A stretch of DNA of 64,000 nucleotides, taken from sequence record LC819006.1; one strand, written 5' to 3'. Of the stretch, positions 6,967-24,185 are shown in pieces. The notes under the pieces were generated by a model, which was not told the DNA's origin, ran no database searches, and was given only the letters and a program-made list of their open reading frames with translations. Both the position numbers and the translations under genes were made by a program. The first letter of the stretch is position 1; every line of letters begins with the position of its first letter.

Positions 6967-9042
6967 ATGTCCGATCCCGTGACCAGCTATCCGTTTGACC
7001 CCACAGGGCAGGCGGCTAGCAACCGAATCGTGGATGAACAGATCGTCGTCCTCCCTCCGGGTGACCGACTGTTCCAGTTCGCCATGCCAGTCTTCTGTCC
7101 TTTCTTCGAAGAAGGACACTCGCTGAAGCTGCGTGATATCAATAACAACGTCACACCATTAGTAATGGGTGTCGACTATTACCTCAGTCACAAGTTCATG
7201 GATGCCTCCTTGGCTACCATGCATCCGATCTGGGGTTCGGTCAGCTTTCTGAAGCCGATCAGCGGTGTTCTGCTGATGACGTACAACACCCTCGGTGGTG
7301 ATTGGACGATCGATCAGGCGACGATTACCGAAATCCTGATGAACACGAGCCAGAACCCGCGTATCACCACGTGGGAACAGGTCGTGGAACGTCCGGTGGA
7401 TTTCCCGGTGATCGATCACCCGTGGGATCTGGCCGATATGGTCGGCATGTCGGAAATCTACGGCGTGCTGGAGAACTTCTACACCGCTTACCTCGCGTCT
7501 CTGGACCCGAATGGCGGTGGTGGCGGTTCCTCGATCATCATCGATCACATCAACAACAAGAACAACCCTCACCAGGTGACGGCTGCTCAGGCCGGCGCTT
7601 ACAGCACGCTTCAGATCGACACGATGCTGGGCGGCTATGTCAAGACGACCGGCACTGCTGCGAACTCGACCCAGTTCAACGGGAAGACGTACGCTCAGAT
7701 GCTCACTGACGTGGCTGGGGTGAAGGTCGCAAACGCTGCCGCCGCAGACAATGCGACGCATGCTGTCACGGCTGATACGGCAACGAACGCCAACGCGCTC
7801 GGCAACAAGAGTCTGTCGCAGCTGATGACTGACGTGGCCGCTACGAAAGTCGCAAACGCTGCTCATGCAGACAATGCCGACCATGCAACAAATGCTGACC
7901 TGGCGACCAACTCCAACCAGTTGGGTGGTCAGTCGCTGACCCAGGTACTCGCCGCGGCTCAGGCTCAAACGGCTGCAGACTCCGCCAAATTCAACGGCAA
8001 GAACTATGCTGATGCAAAGGCAGACATTCTTTCCGGACAGGCAGCAGACTCGGCTCTGTTCAACGGTCAAACGTTGGCAGAGATCATGGCAACACTCCAG
8101 CAAGCTACAGGCGACGCCAGCACGCTGAATGGCAAGTCGTATACCGACATCATGGCGGCAGTGAAGACCACCAAGGTCGACAATGCTACCAATGCAGATA
8201 CGGCAGCCAACGCAACGGCACTCGGTGGCCAGACTCTCTCGCAGATTCTGACGTCGGTGGCAGGTGTGGTTCCTGACCTGGCACACAACTCGGAAGCTGT
8301 GTACGGCTACACGTTCGACCAGCTGGTCACCGCTATCGGACAAAGCACGACCTGGGTGAACGGCCTCGACTACCTGTGTGTTGATCTCGATCTGGAACAC
8401 GCCACGTTGCAGTCGCCGGCGAATGGCGGTACGGTTGACAATTCGTACCACTACCTGTATGTCGGTTCGTTCCCGATTCCGACGACGGGTTCCAGCAACC
8501 AGTACTACGACCCGACTCAAGAGCTTTATAGCTCATCGATGGACTTCTTCATCTACGGTCAGTCGAAGACTCAGCGTCTGCGTGCAAACTTGCAGGTAAA
8601 CGCCGACAACAAGACGATGGGCATCACGTACTACAATGATACCGGACTGGATGTATCGGTTGCGGGTCTGGGCTTCCGCACGGTTGCCAGTACGCTGAAG
8701 TCTTCGGATAACTCGCAGACGGCAAACGTCAACGAAGTTTATCTGAAAGTCAAGACGAGCGAAAACGTCCGTCGTGTTGGTATCTTCCAATTCACGAAGA
8801 ACAGCTTCGTCATCGACGAATCTGAATCGCTGAGTCTCTACGACTCGACGTTCGTGAATCTGAATGGCGTGACCTGGGTCAACCCGAGTCAAACCGCTCA
8901 GGAAGCCGCAAACGCTGCTGCTGTTACGGCAGAAGCTTCGGCACGTGGAACTGCTGATGCGGCAATCCGCACGGACACTCAGGCAGCGCTGGACGCACTG
9001 GCTGATCAGATCAACTCTCTCACCAGCACTCCGGCTGCTTAA
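6967..9042 (+). CDS. tail-fibre-like virion protein
   Basis: N-terminal YPFDPTG..N.I..E virion-type domain; central Ala/Thr/Asn-rich shaft with about 8 (N/D)(S/A)xx(F/L)(N/G)G(K/Q)(T/S) repeats; distinct C-terminal domain. Confidence 0.7.
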   Translation: MSDPVTSYPFDPTGQAASNRIVDEQIVVLPPGDRLFQFAMPVFCPFFEEGHSLKLRDINNNVTPLVMGVDYYLSHKFMDASLATMHPIWGSVSFLKPISGVLLMTYNTLGGDWTIDQATITEILMNTSQNPRITTWEQVVERPVDFPVIDHPWDLADMVGMSEIYGVLENFYTAYLASLDPNGGGGGSSIIIDHINNKNNPHQVTAAQAGAYSTLQIDTMLGGYVKTTGTAANSTQFNGKTYAQMLTDVAGVKVANAAAADNATHAVTADTATNANALGNKSLSQLMTDVAATKVANAAHADNADHATNADLATNSNQLGGQSLTQVLAAAQAQTAADSAKFNGKNYADAKADILSGQAADSALFNGQTLAEIMATLQQATGDASTLNGKSYTDIMAAVKTTKVDNATNADTAANATALGGQTLSQILTSVAGVVPDLAHNSEAVYGYTFDQLVTAIGQSTTWVNGLDYLCVDLDLEHATLQSPANGGTVDNSYHYLYVGSFPIPTTGSSNQYYDPTQELYSSSMDFFIYGQSKTQRLRANLQVNADNKTMGITYYNDTGLDVSVAGLGFRTVASTLKSSDNSQTANVNEVYLKVKTSENVRRVGIFQFTKNSFVIDESESLSLYDSTFVNLNGVTWVNPSQTAQEAANAAAVTAEASARGTADAAIRTDTQAALDALADQINSLTSTPAA

Positions 9043-9053
9043 TCTGAGGAATC

Positions 9054-10175
9054 ATGAGCGACGTCAACATCACTCCCGTCTCACATGTTTTCGACGAGAC
9101 CGGCACCCTTGCCGAGAACTACGTCGAGAACGAACAACGAGATCTGGCACAGCGCAACATCCGCGCTGCTTGCACGCGATACGGTGCTTTCTTCATCGAA
9201 TCGTTCAAGATCCGGGACGCCAATGGCAATCCGCTTGCGGCGAACCAATACCAGTTTGGCCTGTTCGCAGAAGAACTGTCCGAAAAGACTGGTAAGGAAA
9301 TCGCAGGTGCGGTGATCATCACCGACCCGGCAGTGATTTCGCCTGTCTTCATGGACTACCAGTGTGTCGGTGGTCCGTGGGGCGCAACAAACGAGCAGAT
9401 CATCGATCTGTTCACGGCGTTGATGTCTGACGACCGTCCTGTGACGTGGCCGAACATTCTGGGTAAACCGGATGGCTTCAAGCCTGCTCACCACTTCCAG
9501 GATATCGGTGACCTCTTCGGTGCCGAGTACTTCGTCAATGCGCTGGAGCGTCTGACTAACGCGTACCTCATGGGCGACAATGCGTCGCACGATGAGATTC
9601 TGCGTAACATCGATCAGCTGCGTCAGGACATGAATCAGGGCTTGACTGACCTGAGCAATGCTCTGAAGGCATACGCGGATGCAGGTGATGCACGTGTTCA
9701 GGCTAACCTGGATAACGAAGCACAAATCCGCGCTCAGGCTGATACGACGCTCCAGGGCAACATCAACACGGAAGCGACGACTCGCGGCAATGCCGACACG
9801 ACTCTGCAGAACAACATCAACGCCGCGATCACGCATGCGGATAACGGCGATGCTGCACTTCAGCAGAACATTAACTCGGAAGCCACGGCCCGTCAGAACG
9901 CCGACACGGCACTCAATACGAGTATCAATTCGGTGAACACGGCTCTCGCCACTCACGTGGCCGCAAAGGGCAACGTGCACAGCCTGACACCTGCGCAGCT
10001 GGGCGTCTATACGACTGCTCAGGTGGACGCACTGATTGCTCAGATCAACAACCAGCTGACCGGCTATGTCAAGAAGAATGCCGGCGAAGACACCTCGCTT
10101 ACCGTGAGCGGTGGCGTGTTGTATGGCTGGGTGGGTGGTAACTGGCGTGCAGTTTGGCCGCCCCAGTGGCAGTGA
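9054..10175 (+). CDS. tail-fibre-like virion protein with coiled-coil repeats
   Basis: N-terminus resembles that of 6967..9042 (FDETGTLAENYVENE); EAxxRxxADxxLQxNI repeats; C-terminal GWVGGNWRAVWP. Confidence 0.65.
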   Translation: MSDVNITPVSHVFDETGTLAENYVENEQRDLAQRNIRAACTRYGAFFIESFKIRDANGNPLAANQYQFGLFAEELSEKTGKEIAGAVIITDPAVISPVFMDYQCVGGPWGATNEQIIDLFTALMSDDRPVTWPNILGKPDGFKPAHHFQDIGDLFGAEYFVNALERLTNAYLMGDNASHDEILRNIDQLRQDMNQGLTDLSNALKAYADAGDARVQANLDNEAQIRAQADTTLQGNINTEATTRGNADTTLQNNINAAITHADNGDAALQQNINSEATARQNADTALNTSINSVNTALATHVAAKGNVHSLTPAQLGVYTTAQVDALIAQINNQLTGYVKKNAGEDTSLTVSGGVLYGWVGGNWRAVWPPQWQ

Positions 10176-10202
10176 TAATTTCATAAGATTTACCCTTATG
10201 GT

Positions 10203-11132
10203 ATGGAAGAATTCCATATCGAGGGTAGAATGCTTAGTGTAGATAAAACTGCAAATCTGAAGTTGTGGGACGCAGCCGGTTTTTTCCGGCTGCTTTCCTG
10301 CTGGTTAGAAGATGAAGAAGACGAGTATCGTAACTATAACGATTCTCTGATGGGAACGAGATTCACGTTCCATGAACCGACATATGCCCGAGATCTTTCG
10401 GGAGTGTATATTCTTTACTTCAGTCAAAATGGCAGATTTTACATTGGAAGTAGTCGCGTCTTACGTGACCGCGTCGGTGTCCATATCTCATATCTGAAGA
10501 AAGGTAATCACTATAACCCGAAAATTCAAAAAGCTTACGATGATGGAAAACAGTTTCCAAAAGTTTTCTACATCACTACTCACGGTGAACAGCATGCTCG
10601 TGAAGTGGAGCAGCGTCTTATTGATCTCGTTTTTATGGACGCATGCTGTTTGAATCAGCGAATGCAGGTAGAAGAATATCGTCCTTCTACAGAAGAAACG
10701 CGCGGCAGGCTTTCTGCTGCTGCCAAGAAACAATGGACTGACGAATTCCGAGAAAGAATTCAGGCCATCAATAAGAAGCCTGAGAACCTGGCGAAGCGTA
10801 TCGCCAATGGCAAGAAACTCGCAGCCGACCCCAAATACATCAAGAAGCTTTCTGAGGCTTCTAAAGGCATCTGGCAGGACCAGCATTACGTCGCTAAACA
10901 GCGTGAGTCTGGTGCAGCTGTCTGGAAAGACGAAGGCTTCAAAGAGCGTCATAAGGCCGCCATGAAGGCTAAGTGGGCCGATCCTGAATACAAAGCTCGC
11001 GTGGTTGGTAAACGTGCTGAGGCTCAACGTAAACCAGTTACGATTAATGGAGTCCAGTATTCTCATGCAAAAGCAGCTGCACAAGCGCTAGGCATGAGTG
11101 AGACTTCGGTGCGCAGAAAATGCGACAAATAA
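10203..11132 (+). mobile_element. free-standing GIY-YIG homing endonuclease
   Basis: SGVYILYFSQNGRFYIGSS...R catalytic motif, basic helical repeats, C-terminal HTH-like KPVTINGVQYSHAKAAAQALG; start could be the ATG at 10350. Confidence 0.85.
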
Positions 11133-11178
11133 AAAGCAATAAGCCGTCGGGATATAGTGACTCTATAGGGGATTGATC

Positions 11179-11667
11179 ATGACCACAGTCTTGAGACATA
11201 TCTCGTTGGATGATCTACATCTCGACGAGCTGCTGTTTTCGCCGTATCCGTACGAACAACAGATGGTGAAGTACATCACTGCTGACGGACGGCAACTTAC
11301 ACCGATCGATGCTTCTGAAGTTGGTACCATGAAGCAGTTCGGTACGATCAAAATCGAAGGCATGGAAAAGATCTCGAAGAAGGTCTTTGATGCTATCCGG
11401 AAGTTTTCACACGACGGTCCTTTGACCTGTCATGTCTTTATCGCAGCTGAAGGTGCCCCCAGTTTTCCGGATCACACCGATCCGGACGACGTCATGCTTT
11501 ATGTCGTCGATGGAATAAAAACGGTAATCATTGATGGTACGGTCCATGTTCTGAACGCCGGGCAGTCCATCTATATTCCCGCTGGCGTGGTACACCGTGC
11601 AATCAACACTTCCTCCTCAGTGATGATGAGCATCGGCTTTGAATCTTACATTGTGGAGAAACTTTAA
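11179..11667 (+). CDS. JmjC-like cupin (Fe/2OG oxygenase fold)
   Basis: SFPDHTD (HxD) ... GQSIYIPAGVVH (distal His); ATG at 11179 preferred over TTG at 11173. Confidence 0.75.
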   Translation: MTTVLRHISLDDLHLDELLFSPYPYEQQMVKYITADGRQLTPIDASEVGTMKQFGTIKIEGMEKISKKVFDAIRKFSHDGPLTCHVFIAAEGAPSFPDHTDPDDVMLYVVDGIKTVIIDGTVHVLNAGQSIYIPAGVVHRAINTSSSVMMSIGFESYIVEKL

Positions 11668-11669
11668 AA

Positions 11670-12734
11670 ATGCATCGCACGGTATATATCAAAACAACGG
11701 AAGCGTGCAATCTGAACTGCAAGCATTGCTTTACCGGGGGCAGTCAACCGAAGCGTGAATTCCTCGACGTGGAAAGAACGATCGACTGGGTTCGACGTCT
11801 GTTTGAACACTTGAGTTTCGAGGACCACACGCATTTCGAACTCCACGGTGGTGAGCCGTTCCTCCTGCCCGTCAAGCAGTTGAAGGAACTGACTAAAGGT
11901 ATTCGTACCTGGGGTCCGGTCAAGCACTCGATTGGTGCGACCACGAATCTGGTTTACAAGTTGACGGATGAACTCCTCTGGTTCATTCGCAACGATCTGG
12001 AGAGCATCGGCACGTCCTGGGATCCGGATATCCGATTCAAGAACGACAAGCAGTACCAGCTGTGGTGGGAGAACATGAAGACCATCACGAATCACTGTGA
12101 TGTCACACTGAACGTGAGTGTCTCCCGCAAGCTGACGGAAATGAACGTCAGCGACCTGCTGATGTATCTGCGCGACACCGGTGCTTCCAAGGTGCAATTC
12201 GAACGCATCACCCAGAACGGGAACGCGAAGAAGAATCTGGCCCTTTTCCCCACGAATGCAGAAATCAACGACTGGTATCTGCGCCTGCACAACGCGTCCG
12301 AGAAGCTGAATGCTCGCGACTGGTTTTACAACGCAGCACTGGAAGACGTGTATGCAAAATTCGAAAATGGCAATGCTTGCTCTGGCACGTTCTGTCGGAA
12401 TTGCGAAGAGACCATCTTTACGCTCAACGCGGACGGCAGCATTGGGGGTTGCGCCAATTCGGCGCCAGAGGAATCCTTTGGACACATCGACATGGACATC
12501 GGAGAACTCTTCGACGCCACTGGACGAATCGATAACATTGTTAAAGAGCGCATGCGCAACGAGCAGTGTTACGTTTGCCCTGTGGCCGCTCATTGCGGTG
12601 GTGATTGCCACCGACTGGCTTGGGAAGGCGATGTGTGTGCAGCACCCCGGCAGCTGATGAAGAAGCTCGCTGGTTTGCCGCTCGACGCACCCGAAGTCCA
12701 ACCGAAACGTATCATTCCCATCATGGCGGTTTAA
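11670..12734 (+). CDS. radical SAM/SPASM-domain protein
   Basis: CNLNCKHC (CxxxCxxC), HGGEP motif, SPASM-like Cys set CSGTFCRNC..GC..CYVCPVAAHCGGDC..C. Confidence 0.9.
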   Translation: MHRTVYIKTTEACNLNCKHCFTGGSQPKREFLDVERTIDWVRRLFEHLSFEDHTHFELHGGEPFLLPVKQLKELTKGIRTWGPVKHSIGATTNLVYKLTDELLWFIRNDLESIGTSWDPDIRFKNDKQYQLWWENMKTITNHCDVTLNVSVSRKLTEMNVSDLLMYLRDTGASKVQFERITQNGNAKKNLALFPTNAEINDWYLRLHNASEKLNARDWFYNAALEDVYAKFENGNACSGTFCRNCEETIFTLNADGSIGGCANSAPEESFGHIDMDIGELFDATGRIDNIVKERMRNEQCYVCPVAAHCGGDCHRLAWEGDVCAAPRQLMKKLAGLPLDAPEVQPKRIIPIMAV

Positions 12735-12740
12735 GGAAAT

Positions 12741-13301
12741 ATGAGTACATATCGCACAGACGTCGACGCCGTAGCCCAGGCGTACGTACGTAACCAGGTG
12801 AACGGGAGTATCAATCCGTTCCGCTCGGACTGGGCACCGGGCTACACGAACACCGGCTTGCTGGGCTGGATCTCGCAAGATCCCCCGGCATCACATCCGT
12901 CGTCCAATGGCGAACTCAGCACTGCCGGTAACACGATGGTGACCAACCAGGTTCGCAATGCGATGATCGACCTGGGCAACTACTACGGCTGGATCGCCAA
13001 GGGCCACTACGGTCTGCAGTCGACCAACCAGAGCGGCGCGAACTATCTGCAATACGAGGGCTATGGCTACTTCGTGTTCAACGGTGCAGCGCCTGGTGCT
13101 CAGGATCATGCGAACCGCGTGGCGGCAGATCTGAACACTGCTGGGACGATGAGCGGCACGATTCGTTATCAGTCGCTCATCGACTTCTACAACTTTGCGT
13201 GGAGCATCATCTGGAATCGTAAGGACGACCTGCAAGTCGAACTCACGGTTTGCCATTCGTCGTGCCACACCTCATGCCACGGCTCCCGCGGTCGTCGTTA
13301 A
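12741..13301 (+). CDS. candidate radical SAM substrate with C-terminal (CHxS)3-RGRR tail
   Basis: 186 aa ending VCHSSCHTSCHGSRGRR; RBS AAGGA overlaps the upstream rSAM stop. Confidence 0.7.
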   Translation: MSTYRTDVDAVAQAYVRNQVNGSINPFRSDWAPGYTNTGLLGWISQDPPASHPSSNGELSTAGNTMVTNQVRNAMIDLGNYYGWIAKGHYGLQSTNQSGANYLQYEGYGYFVFNGAAPGAQDHANRVAADLNTAGTMSGTIRYQSLIDFYNFAWSIIWNRKDDLQVELTVCHSSCHTSCHGSRGRR

Positions 13302-13311
13302 GGAGAAGACC

Positions 13312-14379
13312 ATGATCAATCTGTTCGATCGTGTCTATCTGCGACACGACAACGTTCTCGCTCGTGGTGAAGGTCAGAAGAAGCTGATCATCAGCCCGAA
13401 AGTCAAAGAAATCGCGTACGTCACCGATGCACTTCAGCAACAACAGGCTGGCATCCTCGGCACGTACGAGACGCTCGCTGATGCCATCCATTACGCTGGT
13501 GACATCAATGCGTTCTGGGGCCAGCTGCGCACCAAGGCGAAGATCGTCATCATCGCTGACCGTGTGACCGTCGCTACGCTGCTCGTGCAGTACTGGAAGG
13601 CAATCTTCCAGAGCCCGTCGAAAGAAAGCCTGTATCTGCTGTACGAGATCATGGTGAACAACGAGAACCTGCATTCGCACCGTCCGACGGAAAAGCGCAC
13701 GCATCTGTTCTCGCCCAATTCGACGCCGGGCGATGTCGAAAAGCTCACGGAAGAAGAGTTCCAGGAAATCTTCGACAAGAACGAAGCGGCTCTGATCGAC
13801 TTCTCGTCGGATGCTCAGCTGTCGAGCATTCCGTTTGAATATCTGCTGATGTCATATCTGGCAGATCCGAAGGACGAGTTGGTGAAGCGAGTGCTCTTCC
13901 AGAAGCTCGACGGCATCATGCGCAGCAACATCGTCGCGAAGCTGATCGGCGGTCGTGAAGAACTCATGTTCGAATCGCACAACTACTATCTGCTCACTTC
14001 GGATGGGCCGGAAGAACTGATCGTCGACCCGATCGGTTACATGAAGAAGAGCGGTCATCTGGCGTGGGTCATGGACGAAGCATTCGTCTACGGCAACGAA
14101 GACGAGATCCTCGCGAAGTATTCGCTGGATCAGATCAAGTTCTTCTTCGAACAGATCAAGCGTCTGGTGCTGGAAGATGAATCGATCTTCGTGGCGATCG
14201 ACTGCGTGAAGAAGAAACAATTCGCGCGCCTGATCGAATACGACATCGACGATCATCAGGGCAACTTCTTCGGCACGGGTGCATTCGTGAACAAGATCAA
14301 CGGTCTGTTGGTTTCGTTCGCGTATCAGCTCAAGCGCATGGGGAACGTCAATCTCCTGAAGCAGTACGAACTGAAGTAA
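13312..14379 (+). CDS. hypothetical protein in the rSAM cluster
   Basis: RBS AGGAG overlapping the previous stop gives start MINLFDRV at 13312. Confidence 0.7.
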   Translation: MINLFDRVYLRHDNVLARGEGQKKLIISPKVKEIAYVTDALQQQQAGILGTYETLADAIHYAGDINAFWGQLRTKAKIVIIADRVTVATLLVQYWKAIFQSPSKESLYLLYEIMVNNENLHSHRPTEKRTHLFSPNSTPGDVEKLTEEEFQEIFDKNEAALIDFSSDAQLSSIPFEYLLMSYLADPKDELVKRVLFQKLDGIMRSNIVAKLIGGREELMFESHNYYLLTSDGPEELIVDPIGYMKKSGHLAWVMDEAFVYGNEDEILAKYSLDQIKFFFEQIKRLVLEDESIFVAIDCVKKKQFARLIEYDIDDHQGNFFGTGAFVNKINGLLVSFAYQLKRMGNVNLLKQYELK

Positions 14380-14386
14380 TTCCAAG

Positions 14387-14428
14387 TGCTGCCTGACTCC
14401 TTCGGGAGTCGGGTAGTATCTTTTTTTC
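14387..14428 (+). terminator. Rho-independent terminator
   Basis: TGCTGCCTGACTCC-TTCG-GGAGTCGGGTAGTA followed by a T-run. Confidence 0.8.
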
Positions 14429-14474
14429 TATTGGTAGGTATTCTTTTTTGACCTATCCCACTGAGGAATACGAA

Positions 14475-15653
14475 ATGAGTGAAGAGAAGAAAGACCCGAA
14501 GCGAATCAATTCCGAATTCATCAAAAGAACACCGAACATCGTTGATCGTGAAATCAAGCGGCGCGTTCTCGGAGATGTTATTCTCGAAATCGATCGGCGC
14601 GTTCTCGGAGATGTCGTTCTTGAACGGCCGGCAGATGGTACGGACGCAGTTCGTGACGATGCGTTCGTGAAACCGCAGTCAGAAGAAGAAGCCCTGAAGC
14701 AAGGTTATTCGTGGACCGCGCAGATGGAAGTCAAAGACGGTGAAGTGAAAGTCACGGCAACCAACCCCGTCGTACAAGCAGAAAACGTCGGCGATGGCTG
14801 GGGTGCAGAACTCCCGCCGCAAGAACAAACGCCTGAAGTCCAGACCGGTATTCCGGAAGACAAGCTGCGTGAAGTCACCGTGCCGTTCCCCGCCGACAAG
14901 ATCCGCGAGTACTTCCAGGACAAGTCGCTCTTCTTCATCGCGAACTACAGCGAATCGAAGCTGAAGGGCGGTGCGTTCCTCACGTACCTGTCGAACATCA
15001 ACATCCCGTCGGATGTGAAGTTCAATACGCCGATCGGCTACGACGAGTACGCCGAGATCATGAAGGCGTACATGGAGCAGCCGGGCGTCATCAATTGCGC
15101 GGGCCTCCACGTCATGGCGGCTGAAATGCTGCTGGTCGCCAAGGGCCTGCCGTATGAGCGTTCGCCCTACGCTCTGCCGATCGACGAGAAGACCATCCTG
15201 ATGTTCATCGAAGAACATTACGAGATGGTCCAGAAGTGGCTGCACTTCATCGACTCGACGCAAGTGTTCGCCCTGCGTTCGATCAAGGCACTGAACGACT
15301 TCTACAATCCGGATACGCGTTTCCCGGTCGTGGAAGATCGCAGCTACGTGGGCTGGAACATCGCCCAGCTGTTCCGTATTCCGGAATTCATTGCCGTGTA
15401 CTTCTCGATTCCCAACGTCGAGTACAAGCTGTCATACTTCAAGGACCAGTACGAAGAGTACATGTTCAAGAACGAGACGCTCGCCAAGTACTTCCAGTCG
15501 CAGAACAACTTCGCCGCGTTGTACTTCATGCACTATGCGTCGGGCTTGTTCAAGCCGGAAGACATCAACCACGGTCTGTTCCGTATCGGCGTGTTCGATC
15601 CGGAAAGCGAGTTCTTCGAGAAGACTCCGTATGACTTTAGCATTCAAGAGTGA
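14475..15653 (+). CDS. hypothetical protein in the rSAM cluster
   Basis: RBS GAGGA before ATG 14475; acidic low-complexity N-terminus, globular C-terminal part. Confidence 0.7.
   Translation: MSEEKKDPKRINSEFIKRTPNIVDREIKRRVLGDVILEIDRRVLGDVVLERPADGTDAVRDDAFVKPQSEEEALKQGYSWTAQMEVKDGEVKVTATNPVVQAENVGDGWGAELPPQEQTPEVQTGIPEDKLREVTVPFPADKIREYFQDKSLFFIANYSESKLKGGAFLTYLSNINIPSDVKFNTPIGYDEYAEIMKAYMEQPGVINCAGLHVMAAEMLLVAKGLPYERSPYALPIDEKTILMFIEEHYEMVQKWLHFIDSTQVFALRSIKALNDFYNPDTRFPVVEDRSYVGWNIAQLFRIPEFIAVYFSIPNVEYKLSYFKDQYEEYMFKNETLAKYFQSQNNFAALYFMHYASGLFKPEDINHGLFRIGVFDPESEFFEKTPYDFSIQE
14550..14621 (+). repeat. 36-nt in-frame tandem duplication
   Basis: GAAATCAAGCGGCGCGTTCTCGGAGATGTTATTCTC followed by GAAATCGATCGGCGCGTTCTCGGAGATGTCGTTCTT (EIKRRVLGDVIL / EIDRRVLGDVVL). 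Confidence 0.85.
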
Positions 15654-16731
15654 TTCCAACTCTTCGATGACGTTGAAGGACGCATCCCAATACCACCTGA
15701 GCTTGAGTTTGGAGTGGCTAAAGGGATGCCAGTTCAACTGTAAAGGATGCCACGTCAATAAAAAGGCAGGGCTTCCCTTTACAGGCGACGATCTCGGTAA
15801 TCTGAACCGATGGCTTGACAGCATGCGGTGGAAAGGCAATTACCTGCCGACCATCGTGTTCCTGCAGCCCACTGACTTCCTGACTGCCGAGAATACCGCC
15901 GACATCCTGAAGAGTCCGTACACATACCCGACTCTGTCTGTGTTCAAACGTCTGTCGCTGCAATCGACGTTCCTGAACATGGACAACGCCACTGAGATCG
16001 CTTCGATCCTGAAGGCACGGTTCTTTCACATGGAGTTGGAACTCAACTTCATCATTGAACCTGAGAAAGTAAACAACGAAAAGTATCTCGACACGATCAA
16101 GGCTAACCGCGATCGTTTCATCGAGATGCTCGATTGGAAGAAGCACGTCGCATCCTTCGCCATCATGAACGTCTATGAATACGATCGGGTGAAGAAGAAC
16201 GACGTGAAGAAGATCCTGGCTGATTACCAGGCGCTTCATGACAAGATCGGGGAGAAGTTTGGTTCCACGATCGACTTCAACTTCTCCATGACCCGCAATC
16301 CGTGGTGGAGTAACGAAGACATCGCAGAAGCTGTACGTGGCGTCAGTCGAATCTTCGACGGAGGCGTGGACAATGTTTTTAACCAGACGATCCGCTTCTC
16401 GTTTGGTAAGCTGGAAGACTCGTCCATCGAAAAGCATTACAACTGGCATCAAGGGCACTTGTATGTGTCGCCGATGATCTACGAGCGTATCGCGTCGTTT
16501 CATCGGAAACTTCAGATTCCACTCACGCTGTATTCCGTGTGGGAGACTGAAGACTTCGAACGCCGGTTGCTGATTGATCAGTACCACAATTCCGAAACCA
16601 AGACCGAGTGCAATTCGTGTCGATATCAAGCCTCTTGTATTGAGCGCAATGTCCTGACGTTTATGGACATGCACGAAATCAAGGACTGCATCATCGCCCG
16701 CAAAGCTCTCGATGCCATTAACGTCATCTGA
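15631..16731 (+). CDS. divergent radical SAM-like protein
   Basis: CQFNCKGC motif and C-terminal CNSCRYQASC..C; no GGE motif; start 15631 or 15667. Confidence 0.7.
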   Translation: MTLAFKSDSNSSMTLKDASQYHLSLSLEWLKGCQFNCKGCHVNKKAGLPFTGDDLGNLNRWLDSMRWKGNYLPTIVFLQPTDFLTAENTADILKSPYTYPTLSVFKRLSLQSTFLNMDNATEIASILKARFFHMELELNFIIEPEKVNNEKYLDTIKANRDRFIEMLDWKKHVASFAIMNVYEYDRVKKNDVKKILADYQALHDKIGEKFGSTIDFNFSMTRNPWWSNEDIAEAVRGVSRIFDGGVDNVFNQTIRFSFGKLEDSSIEKHYNWHQGHLYVSPMIYERIASFHRKLQIPLTLYSVWETEDFERRLLIDQYHNSETKTECNSCRYQASCIERNVLTFMDMHEIKDCIIARKALDAINVI

Positions 16732-16735
16732 GACG

Positions 16736-16765
16736 CATATGGAGTGGCCTAGGCCACTCCATATG
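16736..16765. repeat. perfect 30-bp palindrome (possible terminator or processing hairpin)
   Basis: CATATGGAGTGGCCT-AGGCCACTCCATATG between two co-oriented rSAM genes. Confidence 0.8.
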
Positions 16766-16780
16766 TCCTGTGAGGAATGT

Positions 16781-17803
16781 ATGAACAACGATATCCTGAA
16801 TGAAATGCTGTCATCCAAAGTGCAAGACAGCACCGAGATCGAACATCACCTGTTCGAGTACTGCAACCTGAACTGCTCGTTCTGCGGTCAGGACCATGAC
16901 TCGAAGGTCGGTATGGAATCGATCATCGAAAAAGCCCACAAGACTGTGGACTTCATCTTCCATTCGAAGAAGAAGAAACACACCATCAACGTGATGGGTG
17001 GTGAGATTTTCAACGACAAGATTGAAACGAATGTTTTCCTGGACTACTACAAGTTCTATGAGATCATCGAAAAGGTCTGTCGCGATCTCGGAGTGGAATT
17101 CCAGATCAACTGGGTCACCAATCTCATCTTCACGGAAAACCGTGAGATGGTTCAGTGGCTCATGAACAAAACGAAGGCACATGCCAGGATCTCGACGTCA
17201 TATGACTTCGCTGGGCGTGGTCTGGACATCAATCGTTCACTGGTGTTCAAGCACAACCTGAATCTGTTCAAGGAGCATATCGGGGTCGTTGGTTTCGTTC
17301 TCACGAAGCCTGCTATCCGTAAACTCCTCAATAGCACGGACATGTTCTTCCAGACTGTCCTGTATCCGAATTTTCCGTTGTATTTCGACTGGTACGTACC
17401 GGAGAAGTCCTCGAACAAGATGATGCCATCCGAACAGGAAATGCTCGATGCGCTTCTCTTTGTCGCGGATAAGTATCCGAACATCGAACCGGTTAAGTCC
17501 ATGCTGGAGAACGAGCACAACAAGATGACGTGCTTCAGCTTGAACAAGACCACTATCCTGCCTGATGGCAAGGAAGTAACTTGTCGGTACCTCGAATACG
17601 ACAAAGAAAAATTTAACAACGACATTGATTATTCGAGCAATGCCAACATCATCCAGGCTCACCTTGATAGAAACGAATGCTATTCGTGTAATTTTTACGA
17701 CCGCTGTCAATTTCGGTGTTTCGTTCAAGCCGATTGGGCTGAACTCGAACGACTCCCCACATGCTTCATCAAAACCTTTTTCGAGCGAACAGTCGGATCA
17801 TGA
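16781..17803 (+). CDS. radical SAM protein
   Basis: CNLNCSFC, MGGEIF, C-terminal TC..CYSCNFYDRCQFRC; RBS GAGGA before 16781. Confidence 0.85.
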   Translation: MNNDILNEMLSSKVQDSTEIEHHLFEYCNLNCSFCGQDHDSKVGMESIIEKAHKTVDFIFHSKKKKHTINVMGGEIFNDKIETNVFLDYYKFYEIIEKVCRDLGVEFQINWVTNLIFTENREMVQWLMNKTKAHARISTSYDFAGRGLDINRSLVFKHNLNLFKEHIGVVGFVLTKPAIRKLLNSTDMFFQTVLYPNFPLYFDWYVPEKSSNKMMPSEQEMLDALLFVADKYPNIEPVKSMLENEHNKMTCFSLNKTTILPDGKEVTCRYLEYDKEKFNNDIDYSSNANIIQAHLDRNECYSCNFYDRCQFRCFVQADWAELERLPTCFIKTFFERTVGS

Positions 17804-18372
17804 AACTCATTCTCATCGCAGCTGAAGCAGCAAACAAGGTCATTGGCAATGACGGCAAGATGCCGTGGCATATCCCGGAAGACCTGTGGCACTTCAAGGA
17901 AGTGACGTCCGGCCAAGCTGTTATCATGGGTCGCAAGACCTGGGAATCGCTTGGCAACAAGCCTCTTCCCAATCGCACCAACGTAGTCGTATCGAAAACG
18001 CTCGGTCCTTTGGAAGCTGCCCATTCTGTTCGCAACTTCAGAACGGCTGTCAAGACGCTGATTGCGGCTGGTTATGATCGCGCTTACGTTATTGGTGGCG
18101 AGTCGCTTTATCGCGCCGCTCTTCCGTGGGCGTCGAAGATCATCCTTACAAAGCTCTACAAGTCGTACAAGGGCGATACGCATTTCCCGGACATCGATCC
18201 TTTACAATGGACAGAATACGATAAAGTTGACGTACTCACTGAGGAAGGATACGGATATCTTCAGTTACGCCAAAATACTCACGACACGCTTTCCCAGCCG
18301 TTCACGATTTACAAGTACATGAACGTCAACCAACCCGACGTCGCCAAATGGGCCGACCTCATCAAGGATTAA
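17800..18372 (+). CDS. folA: dihydrofolate reductase
   Basis: VIGNDGKMPWHIPEDLWHFKEVT..VIMGRKTWESL..PLPNRTNVVVS..VIGGESLY..GDTHFP; ATGA overlap with the upstream gene. Confidence 0.9.
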   Translation: MKLILIAAEAANKVIGNDGKMPWHIPEDLWHFKEVTSGQAVIMGRKTWESLGNKPLPNRTNVVVSKTLGPLEAAHSVRNFRTAVKTLIAAGYDRAYVIGGESLYRAALPWASKIILTKLYKSYKGDTHFPDIDPLQWTEYDKVDVLTEEGYGYLQLRQNTHDTLSQPFTIYKYMNVNQPDVAKWADLIKD

Positions 18373-18374
18373 CA

Positions 18375-19013
18375 ATGGACATCACGCTCGTCGCCGTCAT
18401 GGGTGCCAATGGGGTCATCGGTTCTGGTAGCAACAAGCCGATGTTCGTCGCCCAACACGCCGCGTTCGTTAAGCAATACGCGCAGGGCAAACCGGTCATC
18501 ATGGGTCGTAAGACTTACGAAGCTCTGGGCGGCGGTATCCCTGGCGCCGACAACTACGTCCTCACGCGCAACTTCGCTCTCAGTATTGCGGCGTTCGACA
18601 ATGTGACGACTGCACTGGCTCTGGACGGTGCTTTCATTTCGGCATTCGAGCGGAAGATGGCGAATGAATTGGTGGTGCTCGGCGGCGCTGCGACGTTCCA
18701 TGCGTTCTATCCGTGGGCGAACCGCATGCACATCACGCATATTCGCGAGAACATCGAAGGAGATCGTTTCTTCCCGAGCTATCCAGGATGGCGCCCCGGT
18801 CTCATCAACGATCGTTACGAACAAGGCGAAACCCAGTTCGAACGCATCGACTACCGGCGTGATGACTGGCACTACTATCCGAACGAGACCCCGGAAGACG
18901 TGAATACGCTTATCATCCTGAATGCTATTCGCACGCAACGAGGTTATCGTCCTCTGAAGACGGAACAACATGAACCACCCATCGCTGATCATCAAGCCGA
19001 CGGAAGCGTGTAA
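18375..19013 (+). CDS. divergent DHFR-fold protein
   Basis: VIG..VIMGRKTYEAL..VLGGA..GDRFFP retained, but the PW..D motif is replaced by PMFVAQH. Confidence 0.8.
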   Translation: MDITLVAVMGANGVIGSGSNKPMFVAQHAAFVKQYAQGKPVIMGRKTYEALGGGIPGADNYVLTRNFALSIAAFDNVTTALALDGAFISAFERKMANELVVLGGAATFHAFYPWANRMHITHIRENIEGDRFFPSYPGWRPGLINDRYEQGETQFERIDYRRDDWHYYPNETPEDVNTLIILNAIRTQRGYRPLKTEQHEPPIADHQADGSV

Positions 19014-20046
19014 CTTCAAGTGCACTTTCTGTTCGTCCACCGATATCCAGGGCGAATCTCCTAACCTGGATATCGAGTACATCAAGCTTTACCTGGAGCG
19101 TTTTCCTCAGACTCCGACTATCATCGTAAATGGTGGTGATCCACTGATGATGAAGCCTGAGTACTACTGGGCGATCTTGAAGATCATCGAGGACATGGGT
19201 CTTAAAACCACGCTCTCGTTTACAAGCAATCTGTGGGCTTTCTATAAAAAGCCTAGCATGTGGGTGGACTTGTTCCGCCATCCGCTTGTAGGGGTCTCTA
19301 CGAGCTTCCAATACGGTAATTCACGGCTTAAGGGCGACCTCACTCCGTTTACCGAGGAAGAGTTCTGGGAAATTTCCAACATGATGCTCGAAATGGTTGG
19401 ATATCGTCCTTCCTTCATCGCAGTCATCACGAAAGAAAATGAACATACCGCGATCAAGACTGTCGAGCTTGCTAAACAGATGGGTGTTGTCTGCAAGCTT
19501 AACTATGCAATGGCGTCGGGACCTAAGACGTGGTTCAAGGGGATCCAGATCGGCAGTGCCGACAGCACCTACGTCCTTGCCGACATCTATGAAAAGTATA
19601 TCGAGATCGCCCAAGCGGGTCTCGCGCCGTGGGAACATAACACGACGGTCATGATTAACAGGCTCAAGGGCCTGCAAAATCAGATGTGTCCTCAGGCTCG
19701 TCAGTGCGATGAAGGTATTCGTGCTCTCCAGCCTGGTGGCAAGTATTACAGCTGCGGTGCGTTCGGGGACGATGGATTATATCCTATCGACTTCGCCAAT
19801 GAAATGAAGGGTGGTTTTGAAACCCCTCTTCGTCATCAGCCTGAGCTTCAATCGCTCAAGGACAGCTGCTACGAGTGCCCGTTGTTTGAAATCTGCAACG
19901 GGTGCCGTAAGACCACGCACGATCTAAAACGTCTTGACCTGGTGGAAGCCCACTGCTCCAAGATGAAGACGCTTGCTCCGAAAATCATTGAACTCAATGG
20001 GTTAACAGGAAAGCTTATTCCGACGCCCTATGTCAAGGAGACATGA
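18970..20046 (+). CDS. radical SAM/SPASM-domain protein
   Basis: CNFKCTFC, NGGDPL, CPQARQC..YYSCG..CYECPLFEICNGC..HC. Confidence 0.9.
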   Translation: MNHPSLIIKPTEACNFKCTFCSSTDIQGESPNLDIEYIKLYLERFPQTPTIIVNGGDPLMMKPEYYWAILKIIEDMGLKTTLSFTSNLWAFYKKPSMWVDLFRHPLVGVSTSFQYGNSRLKGDLTPFTEEEFWEISNMMLEMVGYRPSFIAVITKENEHTAIKTVELAKQMGVVCKLNYAMASGPKTWFKGIQIGSADSTYVLADIYEKYIEIAQAGLAPWEHNTTVMINRLKGLQNQMCPQARQCDEGIRALQPGGKYYSCGAFGDDGLYPIDFANEMKGGFETPLRHQPELQSLKDSCYECPLFEICNGCRKTTHDLKRLDLVEAHCSKMKTLAPKIIELNGLTGKLIPTPYVKET

Positions 20047-20591
20047 TGGAACTGCTTCAGCCTTGGAAAACCAGCATCGGCAAAATGTCTGTCCTCGAAT
20101 TCGTGGATATCGACGCGATGCTAAACGAAGTCATGCAGCACCCGATGGTGATGGACAATCCGCGCAACGGCGCGCTTCGGGTGAAGTATGAGGAGTTTCC
20201 GATCTGTTCGGATGTGCTGGAACACAAGCTCAAGCCGGAAGTCGAGAAGTACATCGAGATGATCGGTGGACGCGCTCCTCGCAGCCTCGCCTGGAGTAGC
20301 TGGTTTCACATCTGCATGCATGGTAACGGACTCATCCCTCATTACCATGACGAGGCACTGAATTCCGTTCTGTATTTTACAACGTCGAAGGCTAATCTGG
20401 TGCTACGCGACCCTCTGTCTTCTCAAGCGAGACAATGGCCGCAGGACATGCGCAAGACGATGCACGCCGACCAACAGTTCCACCCAGTCAAGGGCGATTT
20501 CCTGATGTTCCCTGGATACGTCGACCACTACGTTATGGCAGATGAGCCGGACTTCCGGATCTCCATGGCAACTGACTGGATCTTTAGATAA
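20043..20591 (+). CDS. 2OG-Fe(II)-type oxygenase (HxH variant)
   Basis: PHYH..SVLY..RDP..GDFLMFPGYVDHYV..RISMA. Confidence 0.75.
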   Translation: MMELLQPWKTSIGKMSVLEFVDIDAMLNEVMQHPMVMDNPRNGALRVKYEEFPICSDVLEHKLKPEVEKYIEMIGGRAPRSLAWSSWFHICMHGNGLIPHYHDEALNSVLYFTTSKANLVLRDPLSSQARQWPQDMRKTMHADQQFHPVKGDFLMFPGYVDHYVMADEPDFRISMATDWIFR

Positions 20592-20599
20592 GGTAAGTC

Positions 20600-21544
20600 A
20601 TGCTGGCTAACGAATCCGGGATTATTAATATCTCGTTGAACCCAACCTACTACTGTAACTTCCGCTGTGACTTCTGTTACCTCACGAAGAAGCAGCTGAA
20701 CACTCAGGACTACCTGCCTGTGTCGGGTATCCGTAAGAAGCTTCAGGAGATCCTGGATTCGGGACACCAGATCGGTCACGTGGATTTCTATGGCGGTGAG
20801 GTCATGCTCCTGCCGATTCCCTATCTGCAGGAAGTGGAAAGTCTCCTCTTCGACGAGTTTCAGATCGAAGATGTCGAGATCATCACGAACCTCTCGGCCT
20901 ACAAAAAACCGATCGTGGAAGACACGCGATTTGGTCTTTCTGTGAGCTACGATTTCGAGCATCGAGCCCAGCACGAACACGTGTGGCAAAACATGCTAAA
21001 AGTCCCGAAACCCTTTACTGTATTGACTTTGGGGGTGGGGGGCGTGCTTGAGAGTGACCCTGCTGAACTGGTCGAAAAGATCAATTTGCTGGAGAATTGC
21101 AAGGCTTGGGAAATCAAGCCGTACAGCAAGAACCAGGCGAATCAGCTGGACGTCACAGACAAGCAATTCGAAGAGTTTGTCAAGAAAATCATCGAGTATC
21201 CGAACAAGCAGTTCGAGTTCTTGAATGAGACGAAACTTCGAACCATCAAGTTCCGCGACTACAACGCATTCTCCGACAACCATGTCTACATCACGCCCAA
21301 GGGTAACTTCGGCGTGTTGGAGTTCGACGAGAATGATCGTGAGTTCTTCCAGGAACTGAAGACCTTCGACGCTTATGTCATGTGGACTCAAGGCGAGAAG
21401 GCTCGCGTCATGTCGAACGCAACCTGTGGTAGCTGTCAGTACATGGGCAAGTGTGCATCCGAGCATCTGCGCGATGTCCAGTCCATGGAGAACAGCTGCA
21501 ACGGCTTTTACAACCTGATTCAATGGTACGAGGCACGACCATGA
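20600..21544 (+). CDS. radical SAM protein
   Basis: CNFRCDFC, YGGEV, C-terminal CGSCQYMGKCASEH..CNG. Confidence 0.85.
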   Translation: MLANESGIINISLNPTYYCNFRCDFCYLTKKQLNTQDYLPVSGIRKKLQEILDSGHQIGHVDFYGGEVMLLPIPYLQEVESLLFDEFQIEDVEIITNLSAYKKPIVEDTRFGLSVSYDFEHRAQHEHVWQNMLKVPKPFTVLTLGVGGVLESDPAELVEKINLLENCKAWEIKPYSKNQANQLDVTDKQFEEFVKKIIEYPNKQFEFLNETKLRTIKFRDYNAFSDNHVYITPKGNFGVLEFDENDREFFQELKTFDAYVMWTQGEKARVMSNATCGSCQYMGKCASEHLRDVQSMENSCNGFYNLIQWYEARP

Positions 21545-23337: not shown

Positions 23338-23339
23338 TC

Positions 23340-23759: not shown

Positions 23760-23791
23760 TCCTATAGTGTCCGACTAACTAGGGGATTATT

Positions 23792-24178: not shown

Positions 24179-24185
24179 TGTACGA

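What the first reader, a model, noticed from the sequence alone, without database searches (positions are those of the whole stretch)
12741..13301. Candidate precursor: a 170-aa domain ending in CHSS-CHTS-CHGS-RGRR
Seen: the protein's only three Cys lie in a period-4 C-H-x-S triple repeat at the extreme C-terminus (13251..13298), followed by RGRR. The gene sits directly behind the first rSAM/SPASM gene, with its RBS overlapping that gene's stop. Established: HxS repeats are the hallmark substrate of the bacterial HxsA/HxsB/HxsC rSAM system, His-x-Ser can form three-residue cyclophanes, and CxxxC repeats are substrates for thioether-forming rSAMs. This tail combines both motifs. Inference: the tail is the core peptide. 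The unusually long G/N/Y-rich N-terminal part may be a structural (virion-like) domain rather than a cleaved leader, which would make this a modified protein and not a free peptide. Three Cys plus three His could also bind metal.
Basis: partly seen in the sequence, partly recalled or inferred. Interest (0 to 1): 0.85.

Follow-up and report, generated by a model that had tools for sequence, protein, structure and literature searches.

The report
Phage protein with invariant CHxS tail
A small folded protein of a Ralstonia jumbo phage ends in a 16-residue Cys-His-x-Ser x3 + RGRR tail that stays almost unchanged in hundreds of otherwise dissimilar phage proteins. It always lies in a cassette of radical-SAM and oxygenase genes beside tail-fibre genes, so it is probably the target of an undescribed virus-encoded protein-modification system.

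Summary
ORF 12741..13301 (gp72 of Ralstonia phage FLC4-11C) encodes 186 aa. Its only three Cys lie in CHSS-CHTS-CHGS, followed by RGRR and the stop codon, directly behind an rSAM/SPASM gene.

Homologues down to 35% identity keep the tail unchanged, and so do proteins whose N-domains show no detectable sequence similarity. A profile search found 585 clusters (50% identity). A DNA-pattern scan found the tail in 79 viral contigs.

The gene order cupin, rSAM/SPASM, tail protein, gp74-like, gp73-like, rSAM, then further rSAMs and 2OG oxygenases recurs throughout, usually just downstream of tail-fibre-like or giant virion genes. The N-domain folds confidently (pLDDT 86) into a fold with no PDB match. 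It is the fastest-evolving part of the cassette.

Rare variant tails lose Cys 2 and 3 but never the first C-H-x-S, the last H-x-S or R-x-R-R. This favours His/Ser-centred chemistry.

Best reading (about 0.55): a protein-borne, RiPP-like core modified by the cassette. It does not meet the tests for Hxs, triceptide, ranthipeptide or sulfatase-maturase membership. No modification has been shown. I found no published description.

The parts
12741..13301 (+). gp72, the tail-bearing protein (186 aa): folded N-domain 12741..13250 plus the 16-residue tail
   Evidence: AF2 pLDDT 86.4, pTM 0.79, residues 171-186 disordered; no Pfam or NCBIfam hit; phrog_35144, unknown function
13251..13298 (+). C-terminal tail CHSS-CHTS-CHGS-RGRR, the proposed modification site
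   Evidence: invariant in 12 homologues of 35-85% identity and in 7 proteins whose N-domains show no detectable sequence similarity; 152 of 166 representatives end in three CHxx units plus RxRR and stop
11206..11667 (+). gp70, small Cupin_2 metal-binding protein, the first gene of the cassette
   Evidence: Pfam Cupin_2 E=1e-14; H76, H90, D92 and H130 are invariant in 41 family members; precedes the rSAM gene in 54 loci
11670..12734 (+). gp71, radical SAM/SPASM enzyme directly upstream of gp72
   Evidence: CX3CX2C at residue 13 and CX2CX5CX3C at residue 300; all cluster Cys invariant in the family; SPASM TIGR04085 28.8 bits against cutoff 27; best named families reach only about 50 bits against cutoffs of 340-450
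13312..14379 (+). gp73, conserved cassette protein of unknown function, fast-evolving
   Evidence: found in 62 loci; no Pfam, NCBIfam or PDB-sequence hit; 24-51% identity where the enzymes are 54-76%
14386..14429 (+). terminator-like hairpin (15 bp stem) with a T-run between gp73 and gp74
14475..15653 (+). gp74, the most widely conserved non-enzyme partner (core about 238 aa; N-terminal extension in this lineage)
   Evidence: found in 86 loci; AF2 pLDDT 87.3, pTM 0.85; no PDB fold or sequence match; phrog_20767, unknown function
15667..16731 (+). gp75, divergent rSAM paralogue; the annotated start at 15823 omits the CX3CX2C motif
   Evidence: hhalign probability 99.9-100 to the gp79 and gp81 families
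16781..17803 (+). gp76, rSAM/SPASM enzyme
   Evidence: CX3CX2C and a 7-Cys SPASM pattern, invariant in the family; follows gp73/gp74 in most loci
18970..20046 (+). gp79, rSAM/SPASM enzyme, the most conserved enzyme of the cassette
   Evidence: Pfam Radical_SAM E=8e-12; 55-76% identical in distant cassettes
20043..20591 (+). gp80, 2OG-Fe(II) oxygenase (2OG-FeII_Oxy_5)
20600..21544 (+). gp81, rSAM enzyme
21541..22098 (+). gp82, 2OG-Fe(II) oxygenase
22091..23337 (+). gp83 and gp84, paralogous distant 2OG-oxygenase-like proteins
   Evidence: HxD...H plus R invariant in the gp84 family; hhalign probability 85-94 to the gp82 family
23340..23759 (+). gp85, conserved small cassette protein of unknown function
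   Evidence: found in 20 loci; 42-46% identical in distant cassettes
6967..10175 (+). gp67 and gp68, tail-fibre-like virion genes that precede the cassette (neighbours, not shown to be part of it)
   Evidence: PHROG 'virion structural protein', 'tail protein' and 'tail fiber protein' hits; homologues precede the cassette in L007, L105 and Pseudomonas phage DT01

Best explanation
gp72 is the substrate of a phage-encoded, RiPP-like protein-modification cassette. The ribosome makes a folded ~170-aa domain carrying a flexible 16-residue C-terminal tail. The adjacent SPASM-type radical SAM enzyme, probably together with its paralogues gp75, gp76, gp79 and gp81, abstracts hydrogen atoms in the tail and installs covalent intramolecular cross-links. 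The comparative data point to the H-x-S units. Possible chemistries are His-to-Ser-C-beta cyclophane-type links or an Hxs-like change, with the first Cys taking part or ligating an auxiliary cluster. The cupin and the 2OG oxygenases would add oxidative changes to the invariant His, Ser or Arg residues. The tail is not cut off, so the product is a modified protein.

The cassette sits beside tail-fibre genes and the N-domain diverges very fast. I therefore infer that the mature protein acts at the phage-host interface, as a fibre accessory or another host-interaction factor.

Shown: the sequence, its conservation, the synteny, the enzyme motifs and the predicted fold. Inferred: that the tail is modified, which chemistry is used, and the biological role.
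For: (1) Tail invariance. All 12 homologues found through the N-domain (35-85% identity) keep it. Seven proteins whose N-domains show no detectable sequence similarity keep it too. So do 152 of 166 cluster representatives, and the profile search found 585 clusters at E<=1e-3. The 77 DNA versions show that the selection acts on the protein.
(2) Synteny. The order cupin, rSAM/SPASM, tail, gp74, gp73, rSAM recurs in about 90 loci, including Pseudomonas phage DT01 and Agrobacterium phage Atu_ph07.
(3) The enzymes look active. The CX3CX2C and SPASM Cys are invariant in gp71, gp76 and gp79. The metal triads are invariant in the cupin and in gp84. Their best named relatives are peptide-modifying maturases such as DynA, PapB and YhhB.
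(4) gp71, gp72 and gp73 are translationally coupled, and a terminator-like hairpin follows gp73.
(5) The N-domain is a confident fold and the tail is disordered and accessible.
(6) Precedent: HxsA is a protein with HxS repeats that is matured by two rSAM enzymes (PMC13128918). His-C2 to X3-C-beta cyclophanes are known on HAA, HNR and HTK motifs (PMC11499958).
(7) In variant tails the first C-H-x-S and the last H-x-[S/A]-R-x-R-R are always kept, while Cys 2 and 3 can be lost.
(8) Fibre linkage. A tail-fibre-like gene lies upstream in 46 loci and a DUF4815 virion protein in 26. gp67/gp68-type fibre genes lie upstream in the window's lineage. PMC12390700 reports eight rSAM genes inside a tail-fibre cluster.
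Against: No mass, structure or expression data exist for any member, so modification is inferred from gene neighbourhood alone. The pattern of an invariant core with a hypervariable remainder is the reverse of most RiPPs. It would equally fit an unmodified functional motif. Five to eight rSAM paralogues are far more than a 16-residue tail obviously needs, so some may act on other substrates. Variant tails that lack two Cys still keep the full, intact enzyme set, so no enzyme-substrate co-variation was found. gp72 orthologues are annotated only as hypothetical proteins in RSL2 and RSF1, whereas the neighbouring ORF067 is called a virion structural protein. This is weak evidence against virion residence. 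rSAM enzymes are oxygen-sensitive and 2OG oxygenases need oxygen, so their co-operation on one tail is unexplained.
Confidence: 0.55

Rival explanations
1. The tail is an unmodified metal- or Fe-S-binding motif. Three Cys and three His at period 4 could line one face of a helix or combine across an oligomer. The protein would then be a metalloprotein, for example an electron donor or cluster carrier for the many rSAM enzymes, or a metal-stabilised structural element like the His-metal sites of phage fibres.
For: Cys and His are invariant in 152 of 166 representatives, with strict period 4 and almost always exactly three units (88 of 90 distinct loci proteins). The cassette is full of Fe-S and Fe(II) enzymes that need reductants and metal. 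From my own knowledge, phage fibre proteins often bind metal through repeated His.
Against: Natural variants replace the middle unit by Y-V-A-P and the third Cys by Pro, or keep only one or two Cys, yet keep Ser, the last His and R-x-R-R. Two prolines exclude a helix, and one Cys cannot hold a cluster. The invariance of Ser, Gly and the three Arg is not explained by metal binding. A redox carrier would not be expected to have the fastest-evolving domain of the cassette.
Confidence: 0.15
2. The tail is a docking or assembly tag and is not itself changed. It would hold gp72 on the enzyme complex or on the fibre. The rSAM enzymes and oxygenases would act on other substrates: the upstream fibre or giant virion proteins, gp73/gp74, or a small molecule.
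For: There are more enzymes than a 16-residue tail seems to need. gp73 and gp74 are equally conserved partners of unknown function. The cassette is tightly linked to fibre genes that end in a shared ~140-aa C-terminal domain. Variant tails do not change the enzyme set.
Against: SPASM enzymes next to a short Cys/His/Ser-rich C-terminal peptide are, from established knowledge of RiPP clusters, nearly always enzyme-substrate pairs. The shared fibre C-terminal domain has no conserved Cys or His. A mere binding tag would be expected to co-vary with its partner rather than stay invariant across 585 clusters.
Confidence: 0.12
3. The tail is a sacrificial scaffold. Its residues are cross-linked and then excised to give a small cofactor or metabolite, as in PQQ or mycofactocin, and the N-domain acts only as a carrier.
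For: An invariant core with a variable carrier is the pattern of cofactor precursors (own knowledge of PqqA and MftA). The core lies at the extreme C-terminus. The cassette holds multiple oxidative enzymes.
Against: No peptidase or other recognisable excision enzyme was detected in the cassette, though gp73, gp74 and gp85 remain unassigned. A 170-320 aa folded, fast-evolving carrier that is sometimes duplicated in tandem is hard to explain for a mere scaffold.
Confidence: 0.08

Closest known systems
HXS anti-phage system (HxsA with rSAM enzymes HxsB/HxsC and HxsD; PMC13128918)
   Same: A protein-sized substrate, not a leader-core peptide, carries repeated His-x-Ser units flanked by basic residues. 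It is matured by paralogous radical SAM enzymes and stays a protein effector. His and Ser of the modified unit are essential.
   Different: HXS is a four-gene locus found almost only in Pseudomonadota genomes, with a periplasmic effector that binds peptidoglycan. Here the cassette is phage-borne and has 5 or more rSAM enzymes, a cupin and up to four 2OG oxygenases. Each unit carries a Cys, the repeat lies at the extreme C-terminus, and no HxsA or HxsD match exists. HxsB and HxsC scores are 22-32 bits against cutoffs of 268-370.
Triceptides / three-residue cyclophane synthases (HaaB, YhhB, HtkB, XyeB; PMC11499958)
   Same: SPASM-type rSAM enzymes act on aromatic-X-X motifs. His-C2 to X3-C-beta links are known on HAA, HNR and HTK. 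H-x-S (and H-x-A or H-x-N in variants) fits the motif formally, and the Y-V-A of variant tails does too.
   Different: The substrate is not a short leader-core peptide but a folded 170-aa domain. The units contain Cys. The enzymes score 15-46 bits against cutoffs of 310-450. An H-x-S cyclophane has not been reported in what I could read.
Thioether-forming SPASM maturases (PapB ranthipeptides, SCIFF, CefB; QhpD acting on the QhpC protein subunit)
   Same: The core has regularly spaced Cys, the enzyme is rSAM/SPASM, and PapB is among gp71's best named hits. From my own knowledge, QhpD cross-links a protein subunit.
   Different: Scores are far below the cutoffs: 50 against 340, 23 against 425, 24 against 600. 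Cys 2 and 3 are dispensable in natural variants. No acidic acceptor residues are present.
Anaerobic sulfatase-maturing enzymes (anSME)
   Same: gp71 and gp79 align full-length with TIGR03942. The last unit reads C-x-x-x-R, like the sulfatase C/S-x-P/A-x-R motif (own knowledge).
   Different: The scores are 42 and 34 bits against a cutoff of 349. The +2 position is G, S or N and never P or A. There is no sulfatase domain.

Membership tests
HxsABCD (HXS) system | Substrate matches the HxsA family model | tested here: not met
   None of 20 tail proteins matches any relevant NCBIfam model, even at E<=1
HxsABCD (HXS) system | rSAM enzymes reach the HxsB (TIGR03978, 370 bits) and HxsC (TIGR03977, 267.9 bits) cutoffs | tested here: not met
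   gp76 25.1 bits and gp81 22.5 bits to HxsB; gp79 31.7 bits to HxsC, N-terminal core only
HxsABCD (HXS) system | Small partner protein HxsD present | tested here: not met
   No NCBIfam hit of that kind for gp70 or gp73-gp86
HxsABCD (HXS) system | Repeated His-x-Ser units in the substrate | tested here: met
   Three H-x-S units are present. The first and last are kept in every representative with a complete tail
Triceptide (3-residue cyclophane) RiPPs | Aromatic-X-X motif in the core | tested here: met
   H-x-[S/A/N] three times; a variant has Y-V-A in the middle
Triceptide (3-residue cyclophane) RiPPs | Enzyme reaches the cutoff of a cyclophane synthase model (YhhB, XyeB, GrrM/OscB, FxsB, AmcB) | tested here: not met
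   46.4 against 445, 15 against 450, 23-26 against 310, 33.7 against 370, 26.6 against 425 bits
Triceptide (3-residue cyclophane) RiPPs | Aromatic-C to C-beta cross-link (-2 Da per ring) | not testable with these tools
   Needs mass spectrometry or NMR of the native protein
Sacti-/ranthipeptides, SCIFF, Cys-every-fifth | Enzyme reaches the PapB, SCIFF or CefB cutoff | tested here: not met
   50.3 against 340, 22.8 against 425, 23.8 against 600 bits
Sacti-/ranthipeptides, SCIFF, Cys-every-fifth | All donor Cys conserved | tested here: not met
   The third Cys is lost in 7 representative clusters and the middle unit is replaced in 7, within cassettes that are otherwise intact where long enough contigs exist
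Radical SAM / SPASM superfamily (gp71) | CX3CX2C cluster motif and SPASM auxiliary-cluster Cys | tested here: met
   Both motifs are present and invariant in 41 family members; TIGR04085 scores 28.8 against cutoff 27
Anaerobic sulfatase maturase system | C/S-x-P/A-x-R substrate motif and the TIGR03942 cutoff (349 bits) | tested here: not met
   The +2 residue is G 96, S 35 or N 11 of 152, with Pro never seen there and Ala in only 4 of the 152 tails; the scores are 42.3 and 34.2 bits
Classical RiPP precursor (cleaved leader plus core) | Short unstructured leader, with the conserved leader recognised by the enzyme | tested here: not met
   The N-part is a confident globular fold (pLDDT 86). It is the least conserved part. 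No RRE/PqqD-like domain was detected

The most novel reading that the evidence does not exclude
The cassette makes the first known radical-SAM-matured host-interaction or virion protein of a virus. A fast-evolving fibre-associated domain would carry a tail that five or more rSAM enzymes and up to five Fe(II) oxygenases convert into a new, densely cross-linked and oxidised His/Cys/Ser/Arg knot. That knot might bind metal or act as an attachment device, and it would work in adsorption or entry. This would also explain why many large phages carry so many rSAM genes inside their tail-fibre clusters.
Probability: 0.2. Interest if true: 0.9.

Novelty: new variant of a known kind. Interest (0 to 1): 0.78.

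Why it matters
Peptide- and protein-modifying rSAM systems are known from bacteria. I found none described in phages in the held literature. Authors of jumbo-phage genome papers list these genes without explanation or call their number 'highly unusual'.

The family is large: 585 clusters at 50% identity and 79 IMG/VR contigs. It spans soil, plant-associated and aquatic phages, and its target motif is almost invariant. That gives a precise, testable handle, a 16-residue tail, on new radical chemistry acting on a folded protein.

It may also reveal a new layer of phage-host recognition biology. It is a mirror image of the HXS defence system, in which bacteria use an rSAM-matured HxS-repeat protein against phages.

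Tried and rejected
- **Family scans of gp72.** Pfam, NCBIfam and PADLOC gave nothing; PHROGs gave only an 'unknown function' family.
- **Fold search of the gp72 model.** No PDB hit had E<=0.001. BFVD returned only uncharacterised phage proteins.
- **gp73 and gp74.** Profile searches against PDB sequences and a fold search of a confident gp74 model gave no meaningful hit. hhalign shows they are not degenerate rSAM or oxygenase paralogues.
- **gp71 against PDB sequences.** No hit. The cupin matches only generic Cupin_2 structures, so I dropped the idea of a JmjC-type hydroxylase, which rested on a 35-residue match.
- **Enzyme-substrate co-variation.** I asked whether Cys-poor variant tails coincide with loss of an rSAM motif. 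The apparent loss in L105 was a truncated gene call, and the motif is intact.
- **N-domain homology between clusters.** With tails removed, hhalign found none for the window's family. The earlier 99% probability was driven by the tail alone.
- **Cultured aquatic phages carrying the cassette.** tblastn with an aquatic-type tail protein found nothing. gp74-type queries found only 15 phage records.
- **Virion proteomics.** The RSL2/RSF1 paper is not held. The RP12/RP31 phages have rSAM genes but no detectable gp72 homologue.
- **DNA- or RNA-level repeat element.** Rejected because of the codon variation.

Full report
**Where the window comes from.** The region is 100% identical to Ralstonia phage FLC4-11C (LC819006.1), a 225.6 kb jumbo phage of the RSL2/RSF1 group. 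Window position equals record position minus 62000. This is a bacteriophage. The host is a plant pathogen, but nothing done here concerns the host's virulence.

**Checking the observation.**
- The ORF at 12741..13301 is gp72, annotated as a hypothetical protein.
- It has 186 codons and its only Cys are residues 171, 175 and 179.
- It ends CHSS-CHTS-CHGS-RGRR followed by the stop.
- The gene upstream, gp71, is a genuine rSAM/SPASM enzyme.
- The ribosome-binding sites of gp72 and of gp73 each overlap the stop codon of the gene before.
- No other run of this kind exists in the six frames of the window.

**Is the tail conserved?** A search of 5.8 billion proteins returned 12 homologues of 35-85% identity. 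Every tail residue is invariant in them apart from the two x positions. The same search returned seven further proteins of 112-181 aa that share only the tail.

A degenerate DNA pattern for the tail hit 79 IMG/VR viral contigs and 12 MAG contigs. Fourteen of the viral contigs carry two tandem copies.

A profile search of 1.84 billion cluster representatives gave 585 clusters at E<=1e-3 and 227 at E<=1e-10. In almost all the listed hits the match ends at the protein's last residue.

I inspected 166 sequences. Of these, 152 end in exactly three C-H-x-x units followed by R-x-R-R and the stop. Among those 152:
- Cys, His and the three Arg are present in all.
- Ser closes unit 1 in 147, unit 2 in 128 (Asn in 17) and unit 3 in 139 (Ala in 9).
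- The x of unit 3 is Gly in 96, Ser in 35 and Asn in 11.
- The residue between the Arg is Gly in 127, Ser in 14 and Ile in 7.

The number of units is three in 88 of 90 distinct loci proteins and four in the other two. The 77 distinct DNA versions use both Ser codon families and both Arg codon families, so the constraint acts on the protein.

**Informative exceptions.**
- Five clusters within gp72's own N-domain family replace unit 2 by Y-V-A-P and the Cys of unit 3 by Pro.
- One cluster keeps three H-x-S/A units but loses the third Cys.
- Two clusters have a shorter or longer spacer between a first C-H-x-S and a last H-S-S.
- Three clusters insert a Gly before R-G/S-R-R.

In the 164 representatives with a complete tail region, three features are always kept: the first C-H-x-S, the last H-x-[S/A] and the terminal R-x-R-R. 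The last-unit Cys is lost in 7 clusters. One such variant sits in a full cassette whose rSAM motifs are intact (L105). Others show the same cupin, rSAM, tail order on shorter contigs.

From this I infer that His and Ser matter more than the full Cys triad. This argues against a three-Cys metal cluster as the universal function. It also weakens the thioether reading.

**The rest of the protein.** AlphaFold2 with the 13-sequence alignment gives a confident alpha/beta domain (pLDDT 86.4, pTM 0.79). Residues 171-186 are disordered and leave directly from the last strand. No PDB structure matches it.

In the viral structure library the best matches are uncharacterised phage proteins of 173-178 aa, with TM scores of 0.56-0.70. 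The 296-aa Agrobacterium phage Atu_ph07 protein also matches. That protein has the tail and lies in a cassette. So the fold seems to be shared even though sequence similarity has gone. With tails removed, the window's family is not detectably related to the main cluster.

Between cassettes the enzymes are 32-76% identical. The N-domain is 38% identical or undetectable, and gp73 is 24-51% identical. The tail is therefore the slowest-evolving part of the cassette, and the domain that carries it is the fastest.

**Neighbourhood.** I called ORFs in all fetched loci, assigned them to the window's genes by iterated profile searches, and read off the gene order. The recurrent order is: cupin, rSAM/SPASM (gp71 type), tail protein (one or two copies), gp74-like, gp73-like, rSAM (gp76 type), then further rSAM paralogues, 2OG oxygenases and gp83/84/85-like proteins.

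In the window the cassette runs from 11206 to about 23759. It contains:
- five rSAM-like genes (gp71, gp75, gp76, gp79, gp81), which are all paralogues;
- one cupin whose H, H-x-D and H residues are invariant;
- two clear 2OG oxygenases and two distant ones with an invariant H-x-D...H/R.

gp73, gp74 and gp85 have no assignable family or fold.

Cultured phages with the cassette are the RSL2, RSF1, FLC and SURPRISE13 group, Pseudomonas phage pPa_SNUABM_DT01, Agrobacterium phage Atu_ph07 and Sinorhizobium phage Phosso. DT01 has six annotated rSAM genes, and its tail ends C-H-S-A-R-G-R-R. The Atu_ph07 tail ends C-H-N-S-R-S-R-R.

**Linkage to fibre genes.** In the window's lineage and in DT01, the cassette follows gp67/gp68-type proteins. 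These hit PHROG families named virion structural, tail and tail-fibre protein. In the aquatic loci and in Atu_ph07, the gene just upstream ends in a shared ~140-aa C-terminal domain related to tail-fibre PHROGs. The proteins carrying it range from 194 to more than 3682 aa, and a giant DUF4815/phrog_358 virion protein often precedes them. That gives 46 loci with the fibre-like gene and 26 with the DUF4815 protein.

The shared domain has no conserved Cys or His. An independent paper reports eight rSAM genes inside the tail-fibre cluster of Aeromonas phage 332-Vera and calls this highly unusual (PMC12390700).

**What it most likely is.** The tail is the target of the cassette, and the product is a modified protein. 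The grounds are:
- strict synteny across very distant phages;
- translational coupling with a SPASM enzyme;
- intact catalytic motifs in the enzymes;
- an exposed, invariant, Cys/His/Ser-rich C-terminal peptide;
- the established rule that SPASM enzymes beside such peptides are maturases.

The chemistry is inferred only. H-x-S is formally an aromatic-X-X motif like the HAA, HNR and HTK motifs that cyclophane synthases cross-link (PMC11499958). HxS units are also the site of the +8 Da change in HxsA (PMC13128918). The biological role, at the fibre or host interface, rests on neighbourhood and on the rapid divergence of the N-domain. It is the weakest step.

**Comparison with known systems.** The cassette works like HXS, triceptide or ranthipeptide systems, but it fails their membership tests:
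- No tail protein matches any NCBIfam precursor model.
- There is no HxsD.
- Every named maturase model scores 15-50 bits against cutoffs of 268-650.
- The sulfatase-maturase idea fails on both the motif and the score.
- Only membership of gp71 in the rSAM/SPASM superfamily is met.

**Literature.** Ten full-text searches found no description of the tail or of the cassette as a modification system. Genome papers list the genes as accessory or attribute them to DNA repair or metabolism. Most subscription journals are not in the library, so prior work cannot be excluded.

- I used short motif patterns recalled from general knowledge: the rSAM CX3CX2C motif, the SPASM Cys spacing, the 2-His-1-carboxylate triad, and the sulfatase C/S-x-P/A-x-R motif. 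Two of these served as regular expressions.
- In my reasoning I also recalled short motifs of bacterial cofactor precursors.
- None of these is a virus or toxin sequence, but they were from memory.
- In one search my script held a per-column majority string of a phage fibre domain in memory in order to count conserved residue types. It was neither printed, saved nor used further.
- Consensus lines printed by the alignment tools were not used for any query.

Noticed in passing
window 15667..16731: The deposited annotation starts gp75 at 15823 and so omits its CX3CX2C motif. Read from 15667, it is a fifth rSAM-like gene of the cassette.
   Followed up: yes
window 14386..14429: A strong terminator-like hairpin (15 bp stem, then a T-run) lies between gp73 and gp74. 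It suggests that cupin, rSAM, gp72 and gp73 form a first transcription unit.
   Followed up: partly
window 10000..25000: There are no sigma-70-type promoter-like sites, against 11.8 +/- 3.4 expected from shuffles. This fits a phage that uses its own RNA polymerases.
   Followed up: no
window 10203..11132: A GIY-YIG nuclease gene (gp69) sits between the fibre-like genes and the cassette. Related cassettes (L007, L105) have no such gene at that spot, so it looks like a homing-endonuclease insertion.
   Followed up: partly
window 17800..19013: Two tandem dihydrofolate reductase genes are embedded in the middle of the rSAM cassette in this lineage. L007 has one, and most other cassettes have none.
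   Followed up: partly
window 11206..11667 vs L017 (RSF1): The cupin is only 43% identical between FLC4-11C and RSF1, while the adjacent gp71 is 97% identical. This points to a local gene replacement.
   Followed up: no
L024, L025, L031, L037, L056, L057, L060, L061, L080, L082, L086 and others: In a subtype, two tandem tail-bearing genes of about 127 aa follow directly after a giant ORF (up to more than 3682 aa) that ends in the shared fibre-like C-terminal domain. They are followed by gp74-like and several gp75-type rSAM genes, with no cupin/gp71 pair in front.
   Followed up: partly
L088-L099 (GTDB MAG contigs): Twelve contigs binned as Bdellovibrionota, Flavobacteriaceae, Rickettsiales and others carry the tail motif and cassette genes. 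Several are 220-230 kb, which is jumbo-phage size. I did not resolve whether they are prophages, mis-binned phages or cellular loci.
   Followed up: no
P0167, P0081, P0124: Three atypical family members. One is an N-domain homologue with no tail at all. One is a 453-aa protein with the family domain only in its C-terminal part. One has three CHxS units followed by a different, hydrophobic C-terminus.
   Followed up: no
window 6967..9042: gp67 carries a long run of Ala/Asn/Asp-rich short repeats typical of fibrous proteins, and it shares its N-terminal domain with gp68.
   Followed up: partly
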